A stretch of 64,000 nucleotides of DNA from Podarcis cretensis (taxonomy: Eukaryota): assembly GCA_951804945.1 (NCBI GenBank), contig OX638150.1, forward strand, positions 73,222,001-73,286,000, read 5' to 3'. Under the pieces are notes generated by a model. That model ran no database searches. It worked only from the letters and a program-made list of their open reading frames with translations, and had not been told where the DNA came from. Shown piece by piece: positions 7,311 through 57,162 of this stretch. The first letter of the stretch is position 1; each line of letters begins with the position of its first letter. The translations under genes were made by a program, and so were the position numbers.

Positions 7311-8523
7311 TTTGCCATGTTCTTGCTACCTGAAATTGCAAAAGTGGAGGGTTGCTAAACACAAGACACAGCAAATTTGGGGGATGATTCTGGATCCATC
7401 TTTGATCGTGGATGCGTTGGTAGTAGGAAAGCAGTGTGTACTGCAATTTCCCCCCAGTAAAACTGCTGACCACTTTTCTCTGTTATGTTTTCCTGGAAAC
7501 AACCATTCAAATACACTGAATGGAAGAGGCAAAACCAAAACACTCTTAGGGCCACATGACATTAATTATATCATTTGGTGAGTGTGAGATTTTTGTACCA
7601 GGGGCGGCCAGCTTGGGCCCTCCAATCCAGATTAGGACCCTGGTGTAGGGGATATGTTTTTTAAAAATGAATTTGGCTTCGCACTTTTAATTCCCAAGGT
7701 GGACCCAATGCAGATTGGGCCCTCTGAACCTGAAATCTGCATGATTCAAAAGCTGCCGTTGGCTATTTATGCAAGAAAAATCCTACAGTCTAGGACAAAT
7801 GATGTGATTAATGTCACATGTAGTTTAGGCCCTATGTAAAACACAGAAAAAGAACATAATACATAATGAAAGAAATTTTAAAATAGTAACAAGCCAGGAT
7901 GCAATAGATACCAGTACAAAATATCGCTCCTTCCTCCCCCACCCCCAATGCTGCAGATGGGGGAAGTTGCCACAGGACAAGAAGATTTTTGTGCTTCTTC
8001 AGTGTGATATGATTAATAACATTTTAGTCCTGATTTGAAACCAGCACTCTGGGTTCCTGGTTCTGCAAGCACTGAGAATATCAGCAAACTACCACAGTGG
8101 TAGTGCAGCCTGTGAAAACAAGGCAGACTCTCACCCAAAGCCAGGAAATGCACCTTAACTACAAACTAATATCATCTCTATCCCTAGCCGCAGAGTTTCA
8201 TGGAAAAAGAGAATGGCCATCAAACAACTTGAAGGCCTGTAGTGAAGTCTGATTTGAACATACTCTCTCCAGAACAATCCCAGTGTTTAAAATTAGGAAG
8301 TAGAGGACCGTTCAGCCCCAGGAGATATGACAGAAGACTTACGTAGAGCTCTAATATGGCTGCTCTAATATTAGAAGTACATAATGAAAGAGATTTCCAT
8401 AATAAGTTCAGGAATAAGACCCTATTTTTAGTAAGGGGGGGGGAAGTATCCAACTGAGGAAGAAAGAAAGGAGAAAAGGTTTAATAGTAAATTGGTCCCC
8501 TCCATAAGTATCTATCCTGGTTG

Positions 8524-8525
<2 letters not shown>

Positions 8526-8565
<40 letters not shown>
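8526..8565. repeat. (GT)20 microsatellite
   Basis: Direct reading. Confidence 0.97.
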
Positions 8566-24789: not shown

Positions 24790-25917
24790 TGAGTAGAAAG
24801 AATGTGAATGTGCTGAGGATATAGTATATCTTGATTTCAGAAAGGCTTTTGACAAATTCCTCCATGATATCCTTGCAGACAAGCTGGTAAAATATGGGTT
24901 GGACAGGGCAACTGTTAGGTGGATTTGTAGCTGGTTGGCTGACCCAATCCAAAGAATGCTCACTAATAATTCCTCATCATCCTGGTAAAAAGGGACAAGT
25001 GGGGGTGCCACAAGCTTCTGTCCTGGGTCCTTTGTTGTTCAACATCTTTATAAATACCTTGGAGGAAGTTGTAGAGGGGATGCTCATCAAATTTGCAAAT
25101 GACACCAAACTGGGAGGGGTAGCCAATGCCTCTGAAGACAGATTCAGGATTCAATATGACCTTGACACATTGGAGAAAAACCAGCTGCACAAATATATGA
25201 TGGGGGTTACCTGGATTGTCAGTAGTACATGTGAAAAGGATTGAGGGGGTCTTAGTAGGCCACAAACCTAACATGAGTCAGCAGTGTGGTGCAGCAGCAA
25301 AAAAAAAGGCTAATGCTATTCTAGGCTGCATCAAAAGAAGTATAGTGTTTCTATCAAGAGAAGTAATAATCCCACTCTATTCTGCTTTGGTCAGGCCATG
25401 CCTGGAGTACTGTGTCCACTTATGGGCACCACAATTCAAGAAGGACATTGAAAAGCTAGAATGTGTGCAGAGGAGGGCAACCATGATGATCAAGGGTCTG
25501 GAAGCCAAGCCATATTACGAGGAATGGGTGAGGGAATTGGGTATGTTTATCCTGGAAAAGAGGAGACTGATTATAGAGGAGAAAATAGACATCTTCAAAT
25601 ATCTAAAGGAAGGCCTGTCACATGGAAGATGGAGCACGCTTGTTTTCTCCTGCTCCAGAGGCTAGGATCTGAACCAATGGCTTCAAGTTACAAGAAAGGA
25701 GATTAAACATCAGGAATAACATTCTGACATTAAAAGCTGCTTGATAGTGGAACAGACTCCCATGAGAAGTGGTGAGCACTCTTTCCTTGGAGGTTTTTAT
25801 GGACAGATTGGATGACCATCTGTCATGTATGATCTAGTTGAGATTCCTGCATTGCAGGAAATTGGACTAGATGACCCTTGTGATCCCTTCAAACTCCACA
25901 ATTCTGTGATTCTACGA
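24790..25917 (+). mobile_element. 5'-truncated CR1 LINE: decayed RT C-terminal half plus 3' UTR
   Basis: Peptides YLDFRKAFD, GVPQASVLGPLLFNIFIN, IKFANDTKLGG, ANAILGCIKR, PLYSALVRPCLEYCV, KLECVQRRAT; frameshifts and stops; terminal ATTCTGTGATTCTA CR1 repeat. Confidence 0.95.
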
Positions 25918-42545: not shown

Positions 42546-43471
42546 GTGCAGGGTTCTACGAATACCCAGAATCATGAGTATGTTCACAAGTTCTTTGGGG
42601 TCCTTCCAGGTTCCATTCCTGCCTGACTTCCCTGTTTTCCACATATGTACACTCCATATTTTCCCATTCACCACAGGCCCTAATGTCCTTGCCTTCTTCT
42701 TTCCTCCTTCCTCCTTCCTTAATAGAAATTTCCATTGTGCCACAAGAGGTCTCAGTGGGTTGCACATTGCCATTCAGTGTGTGTTTCACCCCTTTGTCTT
42801 TTCACAAATGATGCTCTGGTTGACTCTCAGGTCTCGAACTCACTCAGGTGTAAAGTTATAACCACAGACTTTAGCAGTGCTCAGAGTGCTTGCCCTTTGA
42901 TCCTTTAAAGAAGTAAAAGGAATGTCAAGTTACCTCTATAAAAAATAATCTATCTCACTGGTGCAAGCAGAATGGCAAGCTGTGCAACGTGCCCTTTGCT
43001 GTGGGAGAACTATTGTTTTGGCAAGGGGGTGGGACTCAGCATCTCAATGTTGTTGTTGTTTTTAGTGAACTTCACTGCAGGGAGCTTTTTGCTCCCCACA
43101 ACCACCATCTCATTCTTCTAAATAAGTTTATCACAATATGGATTCCTTTTATTAAGAGACAGCAAAAGGAAAAGCATTATATCCTTTCACAGATAGCAGG
43201 TTTGGATGTTGATTCTGGTGACAAAGGTGCTCATTTATATTAGGAGAGGAAGCTGAAAAAGAAAGTGGAAAGGGATCCCAAGCTTTATCAAGCCTAACCT
43301 CCTTAAGGCTCTCTCATCGCCTGTCCCACCAGATTACCCTACATATTCTGCATAACACTGTGCTATAAGCAGAGAAGAATGAAGACGGTGTCTAGTGGGG
43401 ACACTCTGATGCCCCCCGAAGCGGAGAACTGCTCTCCTGTAGCATCTATCAGCTAGAATATGAAATGAGAC

Positions 43472-43771
43472 AGAAGAAGAAGAAGAAGAAGAAGAAGAAG
43501 AAGAAGAAGAAGAAGAAGAGGAGGAGGAGGAGGAGTTTGGATTTGATATCCCACTTTATCACTACCCGAAGGAGTCTCAAAGCGGCTAACATTCTCCTTT
43601 CTCTTCCTCGCCCACAACAAACATTCTGTGAGGTGAGGGGGGCTGAGAGACTTCAAAGAAGTGTGACTGGCCCAAGGTCACCCAGCAGCTGCATGTGGAG
43701 GAGCGGAGACGCAAATCCGGGTCACCAGATTATGAGTCTACCGCTCTTAACCACTACACCACACTGGCTCT
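43472..43771 (-). mobile_element. Full-length Squam3-type SINE with expanded (CTC)n(TTC)n tail
   Basis: Reverse complement of 2898-3153; the tail reads (GAA)n(GAG)n at 43472-43525 and explains the poly-K and poly-L ORFs. Confidence 0.92.
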
Positions 43772-44989: not shown

Positions 44990-45050
44990 ATGGGCTTTCT
45001 GAAATTTCTCAGCTGCATCAGCCAGTCTCTGAAAATGGAAAAGAGCGAGG
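44990..45050 (+). other. Candidate alternative first coding exon MGFLKFLSCISQSLKMEKSE (phase 1)
   Basis: Good Kozak context ACGATGG; 20 open codons plus G; donor AGG|GTAAGT at 45051. Confidence 0.25.
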
Positions 45051-46320
45051 GTAAGTCCACAGAGAGGTAATGTGAACTGCAATAATGAAAGAGGAGTTAT
45101 TTTAAAGCTGTTCTAGCACATATGGAACCAGCTACACCATTCCTGGGGCTTACAAGGTAACAAAGCATTTTCAGCACCCTTACTAAAGCCGTTCTTGTTA
45201 TGAAAAGAGATTAATTAAAGGTTTATGGGTTCCCATGACCATCTTCTGTATGCAAATCTGATCTTGTTTAATTAAAGGAGCAAACCTGTGAGAAGCCTTG
45301 TGCTTCAAAGTCTTTTATGAGATGAATTTACTTTCCTTCATAAGGGAGGTTGGCTTCCATTGGCATTTGTGGGCAAAAATGGGCTGCAATCTGTGATGAT
45401 GTTGAAGTTAGGGCAAAATCTATCCTCTGTCCCTAATGCGAGAGCTGCTCATGGGATCTAGGATTTGCCTTCACCTCAGTAATGCCTGCAATGGAAGCAA
45501 CTTCATTTCTCCCACATTTAAGTTAATTTGGTTAGTTAGTTAATTGAATCCATGCATCGCTTCCCACCACCAAGAAGGTCTGAGTGACTCACAAAAGATA
45601 AAATGCAGGGGGTGGGATACAATCTATAGCATAATTCAACCTGCCTGTAGTTTAGGAATGACCCTAATTTGCTCCTATCTCAAATGTGTTCTTGCCTATA
45701 GAAGTCAATGCAAACCATTTCATTCCCTGGGAGAAACAGAGTATTAGTCAAGTCAGGTTTCTGCAAACACTATACTTCAAGTGGTTCAGAACAGATACAT
45801 TAACAATAGTAATCCTATCCAGGCATTTATTCACACACACGGGGCTGGGTTCAAGTAGCCGATTCTGTTATTGGAAGGTAGCACAATGACTCCTATTGGC
45901 ACTGCAAAGCTTTCCTTTCACTCTCCCCCCTGATTTCCCTTCCAGGGGGTTGGGCAGGGGAAGCCCCAGAACTGTGCCTGGGAGCCAGGTTCTGCTTGCA
46001 TGCTTCTCACAGGCATCGGTGAGAATGAGATGCTGGATTAGATAGGTCTGGTCAAGCAAGCTCTTTTTACATTCTCATGAGGTTGCTCCATCAGGGAAGC
46101 AGAAACACCTCTGCCCAGCTGCCAGACACTGACTGCTGGTGAAAGTGAAATCAAAACCACCAGAATGCCTATATTACGCAAATCCACTTGAAAAAACACG
46201 TGAACGTAATAGGCTGTATAATAGCAATTGTAACGTTATTTACTAGAAACTACTTCTCAAAATTAGATACAGCTTCTCATAACTTCAAAATCAACATCGT
46301 AACATAACCTATTAAAATGT

Positions 46321-46830
46321 AGCTTATTCAGTTAACCACCAAATCCAGTATGTACAAAATGCAATTCCTATTTTGTCAGTCCCGTAGTACATTCATTTCT
46401 AATTTCTTCATCTCCTCTTGTATTTTTCTATCTGACCTATTCCTTAGAAGAGTACCATGAAATAGTCTTGTAAGTGTCTAATGAGGATGATAAGGTTGGT
46501 AGACATAAGAAACTGGCACTGGTAGATGCTAGCACAGGTAGACAAAGACAAGGATTCCTGGATATTCCCGTTTTGCCCCAACTGAGAATCTATCATGAAT
46601 AAGATCCATGTAGCTGTTATATACAGTAACGAACCATGCACAGCTGATGAAGCCCATTGGGACGAAACATCCTCATTAGACATTTATCAGACTATTTCAT
46701 GGTACTCTTCTAAGGAATAGGTCAGATAGGAAAATACAAGAGGAGATGAATTAGAAATGAATACTACAGGACTGACAAAACAGGAATCACATTTTGTACA
46801 TACTGGACTTGGTGGTTAACTGAATAAGCT
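46321..46830. repeat. Long inverted repeat: arms 46321-46489 and 46668-46830, spacer 178 bp
   Basis: The arms align as reverse complements with about 9 substitutions and two small indels (2 and 4 nt). Confidence 0.97.
46608..46670 (+). ncRNA. Hammerhead-ribozyme-like motif (type III topology, probably degenerate), Penelope/retrozyme-like
   Basis: AUGUA cleavage context (46608-12); CUGU/ACAG stem I; CUGAUGA (46644-50); extra A; stem II G-CCC-AUU-GGG-A-C; GAAA (46664-67); ACAU pairing with AUGU as stem III. Confidence 0.55.
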
Positions 46831-48033
46831 GGTGAAAGTGGGCATGTGAAGGTATGAGTGGGGCTAGCCAGCAAGGTATCAAACCATACTCACACATTGT
46901 TTTCATGAGTGAAAAAGGAATGCAGAATAGGGCTAATATTATTCCCAGGAATGTACTGCAAATGTGCACCATCTAGAGGAAGAGAAGCTAAACCATACCA
47001 GATGTTCTTTGTTTCCAAGAGGTACATTATTGAGCTGATACCTGTTGGTCTAATTCTGATGTGCACATTTGTCTCCAAAGTGACCTGCTGATGTGACCGT
47101 TTCTTAGCAGCAGCATCAAACAGTATTCCAGCCTAAGTAGGGGGGCAGGAGGTTCTCTGATCTGCCAGGCTGCCAACTTGAGGTTGGTGGCAGCAAAGAC
47201 AAGCGACATGTGGCTCACTCACCAGTTGCAAGCAATGATCAGAGGGAAGGCCTGTACCTCCTTAGTTTATAATGAAGCATGGTGGAATATACCCACACGT
47301 ACCATGGGTGTGTTCACATGTAACACTACAATAGAGCTATATGCTGTATAGGGCTGTTGAAAATCTCTACACTATTTTTGAAGAAAATGAGTGGTGGTGG
47401 TGGTGGTGAAGCATTTAACCAATTTTAACCATGGGGAAGGTGAAATTTTCCAACAAGTTTCTTGGGAGTGGGCTTATCATTAGTATTGGCAGTAGCAGCC
47501 CCCCCCCGCAAGGGTTTTGTGTTTTTTTGGCTGCTTCTGTAAATGGCAGAAGCAGTAACTGTATTGGCCTCTGTTCTGCATTCCCCACTACGCTTTAAGT
47601 CTAATGCTCTTCTAGGACACTGTGCTGCATTTCAGAAAGCAAGGAATGGCAGTAGGTGGCGAAAATTTTGCCAAGTGGAATTCTTCTTCTGGTAGGGTTT
47701 TAAAAAAGAAAGGATTTTGGGGGAGTGGGGAGACGTATCCAGAGAAACTTCACAGCTTAGGTTATCTAAGCATAGGCTACTTGACCAGCGTTTAGTTCTG
47801 CTTTCACACTATCTTGTCTTGTTGTGTTCTATGAACCACGGGTCATGGTTCAGTATTTTAAAAAGCAACAAGCCAACTTCAAACCATGGGCAATGAAGCT
47901 GGCTTGTTTAACTAATCACAATTTGTTTTATACCACTATCTCTAGTTTGTATGACATGACAGTGCTGGTGAAGTCCTTCTCCCAGCTGCCTGGGAGCAAG
48001 AGAGTAAAGTCAGGTTCATTCCAGCTAGTGCAC

Positions 48034-48176
48034 ATCATAGAATCATAGAATCATAGAATCATAGAGTTGGAAGAGACCACAAGGGCCATCGAGTCCAACC
48101 CCCTGCCAAGCAGGAAACACCATCAGAGCACTCCTGACATATGGTTGTCAAGCCTCTGCTTAAAGACCTCCAAAGA
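48034..48176 (-). mobile_element. Young CR1 3' terminal fragment inserted into a foldback element
   Basis: About four (ATCATAGA) units, the reverse of the CR1 (ATTCTATG)n tail, followed by GTTGGAAGAGACCACAAGGGCCATCGAGTCCAACCCCCTGCC. Confidence 0.9.
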
Positions 48177-49659
48177 TGTTAAACCATGGTTTGGTATTAC
48201 TTGCAAACTGAGCTTCTGTCTATTGCAGAGGTGGAATAACATTCTTGCCAGCCTGAAGGCTCACAGTGATTTTTGCAGAATTTACAGTGCTATCAATTGC
48301 TGAGCAGATTTCATTGCTTAGCAGGAAGTTATAGGACACCCATGTAGCTAGGACCAAGCCAACATGCTGAGTTATTGGTGAAAATAAAAGTCTTTGTCTA
48401 CAGAGGATCACTCATTCTAATTTGGTGGTTACAGGATTTACCAGAGTGGTGATTTTTGTCTGAGGCCTATTTACTTTTCCTTCACTTTGACAGATTATTT
48501 TTACACTGCCAATTCAAACTCCGAGGAAAGCCAGTGTATGTATGCATAGCATCCAACCAGTCGCAATGCGCCAGCCATTCCTGTGAAGCTGTGAAGGGGC
48601 TGAGGAATCAGGTAAGATATCTGAACAAGCTCTTCCTTTAATTACAGGCTGCAGCAAGAACCTCCAGGCTGAGATAGCATTTAAAGACAGCCTGACAAGA
48701 TCTAATCAAGCGGGATGTTAAATGCAGATGCAAGAGCCATCTTCTTTGCTTAAAATGTATGAGATTTAAAAAGGGGGCAAAAGGAAGGGAGGGAAGGAAA
48801 GAAAAACCCGAAGTGATTTTGTAGAGTTTGCCGTTGAAGTGATTGCAGAAGCATGCCTCATTACTTAGCAGGAAGCCATGGGGCAGGATTTCAGCACTGT
48901 CAAGAGCAGAGCATCATCTGTCCGCCAAGCCTCATCATCCCAGCCCCTTTGGCCATCAGGAGCTTAAAAGGGCAGGAGGCTCAAAGGTTCTTCAAGGAGG
49001 TTAGGGACAATAAACGGTTCTCCTCCCAGGGATGCAGCACTCTCCTCCTATGGCTTTATTTATTTAATGCCTATTTCCAAAATATACAGGAGTCAGCTGA
49101 AAATTAGTGATGAAAACAGTTCCATCGCAATCAGATAAGAAAACACAAACAAAACCTGGGTTTGCTTCAAAGCAGCTAATGCCATTGGGAAATATGTGTG
49201 TTGTTTTATTTATCTTTCCAACAGAAAATTCAAATATCCAAGGCCTGGGCAAGATGTTTTGTGCCTGACAGCAGCTATTCCAATGAACGCTCATGGGGAA
49301 AAAAATTATCAGTACTTACTCTTTAAAAACTCTTGTTGAAAGGTTTCTGGGGTGTGAGAGATGCCTTCCAAGAAAGATGGGGATCGTTTCCAGGACAGCA
49401 CCCTTCCAGATTTTCCACTCTCCCCAGCCCTTTGCCAAGCTCTTGAGAGTTACATGAGAAGTGCTTTCATCTGCTCAGTTGTTGCCATGATATTCCCTAC
49501 CCCTCCCACAGTTGCAAACATTTGGTTCTCTAGTATGTGTTCCAAAGGAAGAAACACAATATATTATTGGTGGAAGTGCATCTGACCGGAGAGGTACAAA
49601 GCTTGGAGATACTCCTTTATCCAATGCCATCAGTGGAGGCTCAGGTGGCCTTAGTGGTA

Positions 49660-56742: not shown

Positions 56743-57004
56743 TTGGTAATAATCTGTAGCAGTTAAGGACAGGAACTAGGGGCAGATAAATCTATCAACT
56801 TTAATTTTTCTCAGTTATGCATTTTTTCAAACTTAAATTCAGTTTCCCACATTTCTACATCAGCTTGCAATTTACTTTGCATCTTCAAGCACATTCCTTT
56901 TTAAAACATATTTTTGTATGTAATATTTGCAAGCAATTTCCCAAATATAATTCATTTTTTCTACTTTAATTTCACTAATATATGTATTTTTGCAGATACT
57001 TTCC

Positions 57005-57050
<46 letters not shown>

Positions 57051-57162
57051 TTTTATTATTTGTACCCCACCCATCTGGCTGGGTTTCCCCAGCCACTCTG
57101 GACGACTTCCACAGAGACCAAAAATACACTAAAATGTCACACATTAAAAACTTCCCTGAACA
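57005..57162 (-). mobile_element. L2 3' end with (AAT)15 tail
   Basis: (AAT)n, then TACCCCACCCATCTGGCTGGGTTTCCCCAGCCACTCTGG..ACATTAAAAACTTCCC, the reverse of the 33090-33430 tail. Confidence 0.85.

What the first reader, a model, noticed from the sequence alone, without database searches (positions are those of the whole stretch)
46608..46670. Hammerhead-ribozyme-like core embedded at the junction of a long foldback
Seen: on + the RNA can fold as a type III hammerhead. Stem III is AUGU(46608-11)/ACAU(46667-70), the cleavage triplet is GUA (cut after 46612), stem I is CUGU/ACAG, then CUGAUGA, stem II G-C plus CCC/GGG around an AUU loop, then GAAA. Deviations: an unpaired G right after the cleavage site (one C short of ACAGC-CUGAUGA), an extra A after A9, and a bulged A in stem II (consistent with loss of a T from GTCCC/GGGAC). 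The segment starts CATGT and ends GAAACAT, i.e. a 61-nt circular permutation around the palindromic ACAUGU helix III. Established: palindromic minimal helix III and insertions after A9 are typical of hammerheads in Penelope-like elements and non-LTR retrozymes. Inference: this is a relic, or variant, of an undescribed lacertid ribozyme-bearing retroelement, possibly producing self-cleaving or circular RNA from a host intron.
Basis: partly seen in the sequence, partly recalled or inferred. Interest (0 to 1): 0.8.

Follow-up and report, generated by a model that had tools for sequence, protein, structure and literature searches.

The report
Chance hammerhead look-alike inside retroposon foldback
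The "hammerhead ribozyme" is most likely a chance look-alike at the inner end of an old, ordinary retroposon insertion that carries an inverted partial copy of itself, so nothing here points to a self-cleaving RNA.

Summary
The ribozyme reading has no support.

- **Model score:** no Rfam hammerhead model scores at E<=10, even on a 141-nt query.
- **Folding:** the proposed fold is worth -1.3 kcal/mol against an MFE of -11.5 (z = +0.25). In context, helices II and III have probability ~0.

What is really there is a ~680-bp insertion (46148-46830) of a high-copy, non-coding repeat. A 13-bp target-site duplication flanks it, and it is present in four related species.

It has two parts. One copy spans 46148-46669. 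An inverted partial copy (46668-46830, the reverse complement of 46321-46489) is joined head-to-head to it.

Copy number falls away from 46148. Other copies in the genome show inverted joints fixed at 46669 with a variable partner. Together these indicate an element on the minus strand whose RNA 5' end is 46669.

So the motif lies antisense at the element's 5' end. The last base of its "helix III" comes from the junction, and other copies continue differently after 46669.

A decayed Penelope-type hammerhead fragment remains a minority possibility.

The parts
46135..46147 (.). Left copy of the 13-bp target-site duplication GCTGGTGAAAGTG
   Evidence: It is the only exact direct repeat of 9 bp or more shared by the two 200-nt flank zones; chance expectation 6e-4. 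It ends exactly where the repeat family begins in the laid contigs.
46148..46669 (-). Main copy of a high-copy non-coding dispersed repeat. Inferred sense strand is minus, with the 3' end at 46148 and the 5' end at 46669.
   Evidence: Summed contig depth is 400-1300 against ~20 for single copy, and it falls from 46148 rightwards. Loose ends before 46148 all differ from one another. Inverted joints in other copies are fixed at 46669. No Pfam domain in its ORFs and no tRNA-like head. The orientation is an inference.
46321..46489 (.). Left arm of the foldback, an internal part of the main copy
46668..46830 (+). Inverted partial copy (right arm), the reverse complement of 46321-46489. It is joined to the main copy's 5' end through a 2-nt CA overlap and to the flank through a 3-nt GCT overlap.
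   Evidence: 9 substitutions and 6 indel positions against the left arm. It shares the left arm's letter at 8 of 10 sites where most family contigs differ, so both arms come from one source.
46828..46840 (.). Right copy of the 13-bp target-site duplication
46608..46670 (+).
   Evidence: Letters confirmed. No model score. Fold energy -1.3 against an MFE of -11.5 kcal/mol.
46644..46667 (+). Core half-motif: CUGAUGA, extra A, G...C-closed 4-bp bulged hairpin, GAAA
   Evidence: Chance expectation is about 0.01 per 64-kb window, or about 230 per 1.5 Gb.
46570..46581 (+). Strand that pairs with 46657-46668 and so competes with helix II and GAAA. It may also be the snap-back site behind the 46569/46669 inverted joint seen in other copies.
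   Evidence: Pair probability is 0.98 in a 121-nt context and 0.57 in a 361-nt context. Joint and loose end. The snap-back role is an inference.
46613..46627 (+). Local hairpin GCUGU / ACAGU that takes up the 5' strand of the proposed helix I
   Evidence: Present in the MFE and centroid structures.

Best explanation
The locus is an old insertion (46148-46830) of a short, non-coding, high-copy retroposon, made by target-primed reverse transcription and flanked by a 13-bp target-site duplication. The main copy lies on the minus strand, with its 3' end at 46148 and its RNA 5' end at 46669. A 163-nt inverted partial copy of the same RNA is joined head-to-head to that 5' end. It formed in the same event, either by priming from both cut ends of the target (twin priming, or the way Penelope-like elements insert) or by the finished cDNA snapping back on itself. 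This produced the 169-nt-arm foldback. The hammerhead-like motif is a fortuitous match on the antisense strand of the element's first ~60 nt. Its helix III is completed by the junction base, and it neither folds nor acts as a ribozyme. Shown: the target-site duplication, the repeat boundary, the high copy number, the common source of the two arms, presence in four species, and the absence of model and thermodynamic support. Inferred: the element's orientation, the way the inversion arose, and the inactivity.
For: - **Insertion boundaries:** a 13-bp direct repeat sits exactly at the insertion edges, with chance expectation 6e-4. Its left edge coincides with the family boundary at 46148, where 16 contigs of one run continue into unrelated sequence.
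- **Copy number:** depth is 1000-1300 near 46148 and falls to 60-260 near 46669, against ~20 in the flanks, in all four runs.
- **Recurrent end at 46669:** opposite-strand joints in other copies are 46569/46669, 46545/46669 and 46406/46669. This window's own is 46489/46669. One side is fixed and the other variable.
- **One source for both arms:** the right arm shares the left arm's letter at 8 of 10 sites where the family majority differs.
- **Age:** single-copy flank contigs of all four species run into the repeat on both sides. A 149-nt single-copy-depth contig of organism C spans 46602-46750 with 3 differences.
- **No ribozyme signal:** no Rfam hammerhead hit at E<=10. Fold -1.3 against -11.5 kcal/mol, z = +0.25. 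Helices II and III have probability ~0 in context, and the foldback has z = -27. No type I minimal hammerhead anywhere in the window. About 500 chance hits per genome are expected for the loose descriptor.
- **Known architecture:** an inverted 5'-truncated copy at the 5' end is a documented feature of Penelope-like insertions, and twin priming is known for L1 (PMC8557442; PMC11167929; PMC2837659).
Against: - In this one window the loose descriptor is expected only 0.01-0.02 times, and the G10.1-C11.1-closed half-motif about 0.01 times. Locally it is a roughly 1-in-100 event.
- All 11 core letters are intact. The extra base after A9 and the G10.1-C11.1 pair are the traits reported for Penelope hammerheads.
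- If this genome holds thousands of true Penelope hammerheads, as reported for some other vertebrates, a relic is not a priori rarer than a chance match.
- The evidence on other copies comes from short de Bruijn contigs, whose opposite-strand joints can be graph artefacts.
- The two outer ends correspond to family positions 173 nt apart. That is more than the 30-40 bp 'tail' of Penelope-like elements.
- The two cDNAs overlap, which classical twin priming on a single RNA does not predict.
- I could not obtain other copies as sequence, so conservation of the core was not tested.
Confidence: 0.75

Rival explanations
1. The core half (ACAG-CUGAUGA-A-hairpin-GAAAC) is a real but dead fragment of a Penelope-type minimal hammerhead. 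It was captured in, or ancestral to, the 5'-terminal ~100 nt of this repeat family. It is now truncated within helix III at 46669 and is inactive.
For: - The core is intact, with an extra base between A9 and G10.1, a G10.1-C11.1 pair, and GAAAC followed by A. These are all traits listed for Penelope hammerheads.
- The insertion has a Penelope-like head-to-head inverted architecture.
- Other notes of this scan report Penelope-type hammerheads in the same genome (unchecked leads).
- The half-motif is expected by chance only about 0.01 times per window.
Against: - No Rfam hammerhead score.
- Helix II is 1+3 bp with a bulge, against 6-8 bp in metazoan Penelope hammerheads.
- The motif is antisense under the inferred orientation and lies at the 5' end. 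Penelope hammerheads are sense and lie in the pseudo-LTR towards the 3' end.
- No sense-strand hammerhead core anywhere in the insertion.
- No RT or GIY-YIG remnant.
Confidence: 0.15
2. It is a working variant hammerhead (type III, or type I acting as a dimer) that cleaves plus-strand transcripts, for example host intron RNA, after 46612.
For: - Core letters intact.
- A base inserted after A9 is tolerated in natural hammerheads.
- The orthologue in organism C keeps the segment with at most 3 differences in 149 nt. That matches the overall divergence, so it is uninformative.
Against: - An unpaired G lies between the cleavage site and helix I, or alternatively C3 is consumed by pairing with it.
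- Helices are 4 bp and helix II has a 3-nt loop and a bulge.
- Fold -1.3 against -11.5 kcal/mol. Helices II and III have probability ~0 in context, and CAU is buried in a 169-nt duplex.
- No model score.
- No second copy nearby for dimer formation.
- No RNA run holds the stretch.
Confidence: 0.03
3. The foldback arose at the DNA level after insertion, by replication template switching or a local inverted duplication, and not during retroposition.
For: - The arms are each other's closest relatives.
- There is 2-3-nt microhomology at both joints.
Against: - The right target-site duplication abuts, and overlaps by 3 nt, the outer end of the inverted arm. The arm was therefore inside the insertion when the duplication was made.
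- Several other copies have independent inverted joints at the same 46669 position.
Confidence: 0.07

Closest known systems
Minimal type I hammerheads of Penelope-like elements (Cervera & de la Pena 2014, PMC4209133)
   Same: CUGAUGA and GAAA cores, one extra base between A9 and G10.1, a G10.1-C11.1 pair, GAAAC, and a potential palindromic ACAUGU if the two ends of the segment were joined.
   Different: - Those are type I: GAAA is followed by a tiny palindromic helix III, UH, then the 3' strand of helix I. Here GAAACA runs into a junction.
- Helix II is 6-8 bp there and 1+3 bp with a bulge here.
- They lie in sense within pseudo-LTRs. This motif is inferred to be antisense at a 5' end.
- They form families with covariation, which was not shown here.
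Type III hammerheads (Rfam Hammerhead_3: viroids, plant satellite RNAs, plant retrozymes)
   Different: No score against the model at E<=10. There is an unpaired base at position 1.1. No loop-loop contacts can be named. This is a plant and viroid family with no known vertebrate retroelement members (my own knowledge).
5'-inverted non-LTR insertions made by twin priming (L1; PMC2837659)
   Same: Target-site duplication, 3' end at the flank, and an inverted segment at the 5' side joined by microhomology.
   Different: In classical twin priming the inverted part lies upstream of the direct part in the RNA. Here it duplicates 169 nt already present in the direct part. There is no poly(A) tail.
Penelope-like insertion architecture (PMC8557442, PMC11167929)
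   Same: An inverted 5'-truncated copy directly at the 5' end, forming inverted repeats. Both DNA ends prime reverse transcription, and initiation can be internal to the RNA 3' end.
   Different: No pseudo-LTR tandem, no RT or GIY-YIG remnant, and no sense-strand hammerhead. The two outer ends differ by 173 nt, not a 30-40-bp tail.

Membership tests
Hammerhead ribozyme (any type) | Conserved core CUGANGA ... GAAA | tested here: met
   46644-50 and 46664-67.
Hammerhead ribozyme (any type) | Cleavage-site UH followed directly by the N1.1-N2.1 pair of helix I | tested here: not met
   G46613 faces G46643. The fold needs an unpaired G, or G46613 pairs with core C3.
Hammerhead ribozyme (any type) | Score against a curated covariance model (Rfam hammerhead families) | tested here: not met
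   No hit at E<=10 on 3.5 kb or on 141 nt, and none at gathering.
Hammerhead ribozyme (any type) | Three-helix junction is a favoured fold of the RNA | tested here: not met
   -1.3 against an MFE of -11.5 kcal/mol; z = +0.25. Helices II and III have probability ~0 in 121-nt and 361-nt contexts.
Hammerhead ribozyme (any type) | Helices kept by compensatory changes across copies | not testable with these tools
   Other copies were seen only as contig tables. Listed differences in the motif (46631, 46637, a 7-nt skip) lie in loop 1, and 44 further differences were not shown. No other copy could be fetched as sequence.
Hammerhead ribozyme (any type) | Self-cleavage | not testable with these tools
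   Needs a bench assay. No RNA run holds the stretch.
Penelope-type minimal hammerhead | Type I layout with short palindromic helix III after GAAA, then UH and the 3' strand of helix I | tested here: not met
   GAAACA is followed by UCCUC here and by GGGGAAU in another copy. A type I scan of the window found none.
Penelope-type minimal hammerhead | Extra base between 9 and 10.1, and a G10.1-C11.1 pair | tested here: met
   A46651; G46652-C46663.
Penelope-type minimal hammerhead | Long helix II (6-8 bp) | tested here: not met
   1 + 3 bp split by A46662, with a 3-nt loop.
Penelope-type minimal hammerhead | Sense orientation within the pseudo-LTR of the element | tested here: inconclusive
   The copy-number gradient and the fixed 46669 joints indicate that the motif is antisense at the 5' end. 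The orientation is inferred, not shown.
Retroposon insertion by target-primed reverse transcription with 5' inversion | Target-site duplication at both edges of the whole inverted structure | tested here: met
   13-bp repeat at 46135-47 and 46828-40.
Retroposon insertion by target-primed reverse transcription with 5' inversion | Dispersed multi-copy family with more copies towards the 3' end | tested here: met
   Depth gradient and the family boundary at 46148 in four runs.
Retroposon insertion by target-primed reverse transcription with 5' inversion | Both inverted parts derive from one template or event | tested here: met
   8 of 10 diagnostic sites are shared by the arms against the family majority.
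Penelope-like element insertion | RT and GIY-YIG coding remnant, or pseudo-LTR tandem, or a 30-40-bp tail | tested here: not met
   No Pfam hit in the insertion ORFs. No direct repeat inside the insertion. The outer ends differ by 173 nt.

The most novel reading that the evidence does not exclude
The first ~100 nt of this lizard retroposon family (46570-46669) descend from a Penelope-type hammerhead region. The recurrent element end at 46669, four bases before the predicted cleavage site of a type I form (GAAACA|UGUA), would then reflect ribozyme-linked processing or priming. The family would be a non-coding hammerhead-derived retroposon that habitually inserts as foldbacks.
Probability: 0.05. 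Interest if true: 0.45.

Novelty: not a real feature. Interest (0 to 1): 0.1.

Why it matters
Mainly as a caution. A complete CUGAUGA...GAAA core with plausible-looking 4-bp stems can arise by chance hundreds of times in a vertebrate genome, and it should not be annotated as a ribozyme without model, covariation or cleavage evidence.

The real content of the locus is a target-site-duplication-flanked retroposon insertion with an inverted partial copy joined at a recurrent 5' end. This is an ordinary product of reverse-transcriptase template use. It is of modest interest to people who study how lizard retroposons integrate and create long hairpins in introns.

Tried and rejected
- **Rfam:** searched at three scales. 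No hammerhead, HDV-like or small-RNA family on either strand. This also removes the ideas that the fixed 5' end at 46669 marks a known 5' ribozyme, or that the 100-nt head is a known small RNA picked up by template switching.
- **tRNA-like SINE head:** ARAGORN found none. A GGTTCG B-box-like string on the minus strand was noted but has no convincing A box.
- **Type I minimal hammerhead:** a scan of the whole window found none.
- **Other copies in the window:** none.
- **Other copies elsewhere:**
  - A metagenome scan with the core pattern gave 9 microbial contigs and no lizard sequence.
  - An exact look-up of eight ORFs of the insertion found none in the collection.
  - A word search with the 79-aa ORF that spans the motif found no candidate.
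  - The scan's notes searched by sequence were blank.
- **Coding capacity:** Pfam on the insertion ORFs found nothing.
- **Helix I partner in fully palindromic copies:** the strand CUGUGC that would follow the core there was rejected as a helix I partner, because position 16.1 would be A.
- **Plus-sense family with its 3' end at 46669:** rejected, because a retroposon's 3' end must abut the flank and 46669 is central.

Full report
**1. The observation**

- AUGU / ACAU, proposed helix III.
- GUA ending at 46612, proposed cleavage triplet.
- CUGU 46614-17 / ACAG 46640-43, proposed helix I.
- CUGAUGA 46644-50, then an extra A46651.
- G46652-C46663 and CCC / GGG around AUU, with A46662 bulged (proposed helix II).
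- GAAA 46664-67.

The long foldback is also real. Its arms are 46321-46489 and 46668-46830, 91% complementary over 169 nt, with a 178-nt spacer. The 551-nt region folds at -292 kcal/mol, z = -27.

**2. Is it a hammerhead?**

*Model score.* cmscan against all 4227 Rfam families at E<=10 gave no hammerhead hit on 45000-48500. It gave no hit of any kind on the 141 nt 46570-46710, where the filters are most permissive. Nothing in the whole window reaches a gathering score.

*Chance.* My own descriptor scan gave the following.
- A strict type III hammerhead occurs 0 times in the window.
- Under a first-order Markov model of the window, the loose descriptor is met by 0.16% of CUGAUGA sites. That is 0.01-0.02 per 64-kb window, or about 500 per 1.5-Gb genome (the genome size is my assumption).
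- The descriptor was fitted after seeing the site.
- The half-motif alone (core, optional extra base, G...C-closed hairpin of 4 bp or more, GAAA) is expected about 0.01 times per window and about 230 times per genome.

The site is therefore uncommon locally and commonplace genome-wide.

*Folding.*
- The proposed fold is worth -1.3 kcal/mol, against an MFE of -11.5 for the same 63 nt.
- Pair probabilities of its helices are 0.03-0.12.
- The 79-nt segment folds no better than shuffles (z = +0.25).

*Competing pairings.* Four were found.
- G46613 can pair with C46644, which is core C3.
- GCUGU pairs with the nearer ACAGU (46623-27), and this hairpin is in the MFE.
- 46657-68, which holds the 3' strand of helix II plus GAAA, pairs with 46570-81. 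The probability is 0.98 in a 121-nt context and 0.57 in a 361-nt context.
- CAU 46668-70 belongs to the foldback arm.

In these contexts helices II and III have probability 0-0.09.

**3. What the locus is**

I laid contigs of four runs, from four organism labels, on 45900-47250. By share of 31-mers they are roughly 0.7-3.6% diverged from the window (my estimate).

*A high-copy dispersed repeat.*
- Summed contig depth over 46148 to about 46669 is 400-1300, against about 20 in the flanks, with dozens of contigs.
- The sequence before 46148 differs from contig to contig.
- Depth is highest next to 46148 and declines rightwards.

*A target-site duplication.* A 13-bp exact direct repeat, GCTGGTGAAAGTG, lies at 46135-46147 and 46828-46840. 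It is the only shared word of 9 bp or more between the two flank zones, with chance expectation 6e-4. Its left copy ends exactly at the independently seen family boundary. The whole of 46148-46830 is therefore one insertion.

*Two inverted copies from one source.* The right arm is the reverse complement of 46321-46489, with 9 substitutions and 6 indel positions. At 8 of 10 sites where most family contigs differ from the left arm, the right arm agrees with the left arm. The two arms therefore come from one source.

*Old and non-coding.*
- Flank contigs of all four species run into the repeat on both sides.
- A 149-nt contig of organism C at single-copy depth spans 46602-46750 with 3 differences. 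The insertion and its junction thus predate these species.
- No ORF of the insertion matches Pfam, and there is no tRNA-like head.

**4. Orientation and the breakpoint**

Other copies in these genomes show opposite-strand joints at 46569/46669, 46545/46669 and 46406/46669, and one at 46545/46661. This window's own joint is 46489/46669.

In one run, three contigs continue after 46669 with a G followed by the reverse complement of 46554-46569. One side of the joint is therefore fixed and the other is variable.

With the copy-number gradient, the simplest reading has three parts (inference):
- The family is minus-sense here.
- Its 3' end at 46148 abuts the flank, as target-primed reverse transcription requires.
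- 46669 is the 5' end of the template RNA.

The inverted copy is then the familiar 5'-truncated inverted copy placed at the 5' end. It could arise by priming from both target ends, or by the completed cDNA snapping back.
- The 12-nt complementarity 46570-81 / 46657-68 would give exactly the 46569/46669 joint.
- A 2-nt CA overlap fits the joint in this window.
- A 3-nt GCT overlap joins the arm to the flank.

Such architectures are described for Penelope-like elements and for L1 twin priming (PMC8557442; PMC11167929; PMC2837659).

Two caveats apply. The contigs are short de Bruijn contigs, so individual joints could be artefacts. And the 173-nt difference between the two outer ends fits neither the Penelope 'tail' nor classical twin priming well.

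**5. Consequences for the finding**

- Under this reading the motif lies on the antisense strand of the element's first ~60 nt.
- U46670, which completes helix III, comes from the inverted copy. It is replaced by G in at least one other copy.

**6. Comparison with known hammerheads**

Metazoan Penelope and retrozyme hammerheads have these traits (PMC4209133):
- Type I layout.
- Helix II of 6-8 bp.
- A base between A9 and G10.1, and a G10.1-C11.1 pair.
- A tiny palindromic helix III directly after GAAA.

The present motif shares the extra base and the G-C pair. It fails on layout, on helix II, on the 1.1-2.1 pair and on the model score. No type I solution exists in the window.

**7. What remains open**

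I could not obtain other copies as sequence, so conservation and covariation of the core are untested.

Genuine Penelope hammerheads are said to be common in vertebrate genomes, and other notes of this scan report them in this genome (unchecked). I therefore keep about 15% for a dead fragment of a true hammerhead and about 3% for an active variant.

**8. Verdict**

- The ribozyme interpretation is not supported.
- Interest is low.

Noticed in passing
window 24894-25665 (+): Two adjacent ORFs look like a decayed LINE reverse transcriptase. There is a weak RVT_1 match (E = 0.008, below the cut-off) and a FANDTKLGG-type motif.
   Followed up: partly
window 45985-46037: A short stretch with about tenfold raised contig depth and loose ends at 45985 and 46017 in several runs. 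It is probably a fragment of another dispersed repeat just upstream of the insertion.
   Followed up: no
window 46155-46162 and 46334-46341: The 8-mer AACCACCA lies 7 nt from the family end at 46148 and 13 nt from 46321, the point matching the outer end of the inverted copy. This internal look-alike of the 3' end could explain why the second priming started there (inference).
   Followed up: partly
window 47866-47909 (-): A hairpin scores 25 bits against Rfam mir-259 (gathering score 50, E = 0.036). Probably chance.
   Followed up: no
window 43465-43560, 8481-8560, 56990-57060 (approximate): Long ORFs here owe their length to simple repeats (poly-K/R, HT repeats, poly-L), that is, to microsatellites.
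   Followed up: no
L002:550-574, L003:326-350, L005:289-313, L009:1150-1174: Four related metagenome contigs hit by the core pattern show a complete type I layout: core, GC-rich helix II, a long helix III, UC, then a strand pairing with the bases before CUGAUGA. They did not reach any Rfam gathering score. They are unrelated to the lizard locus.
   Followed up: partly
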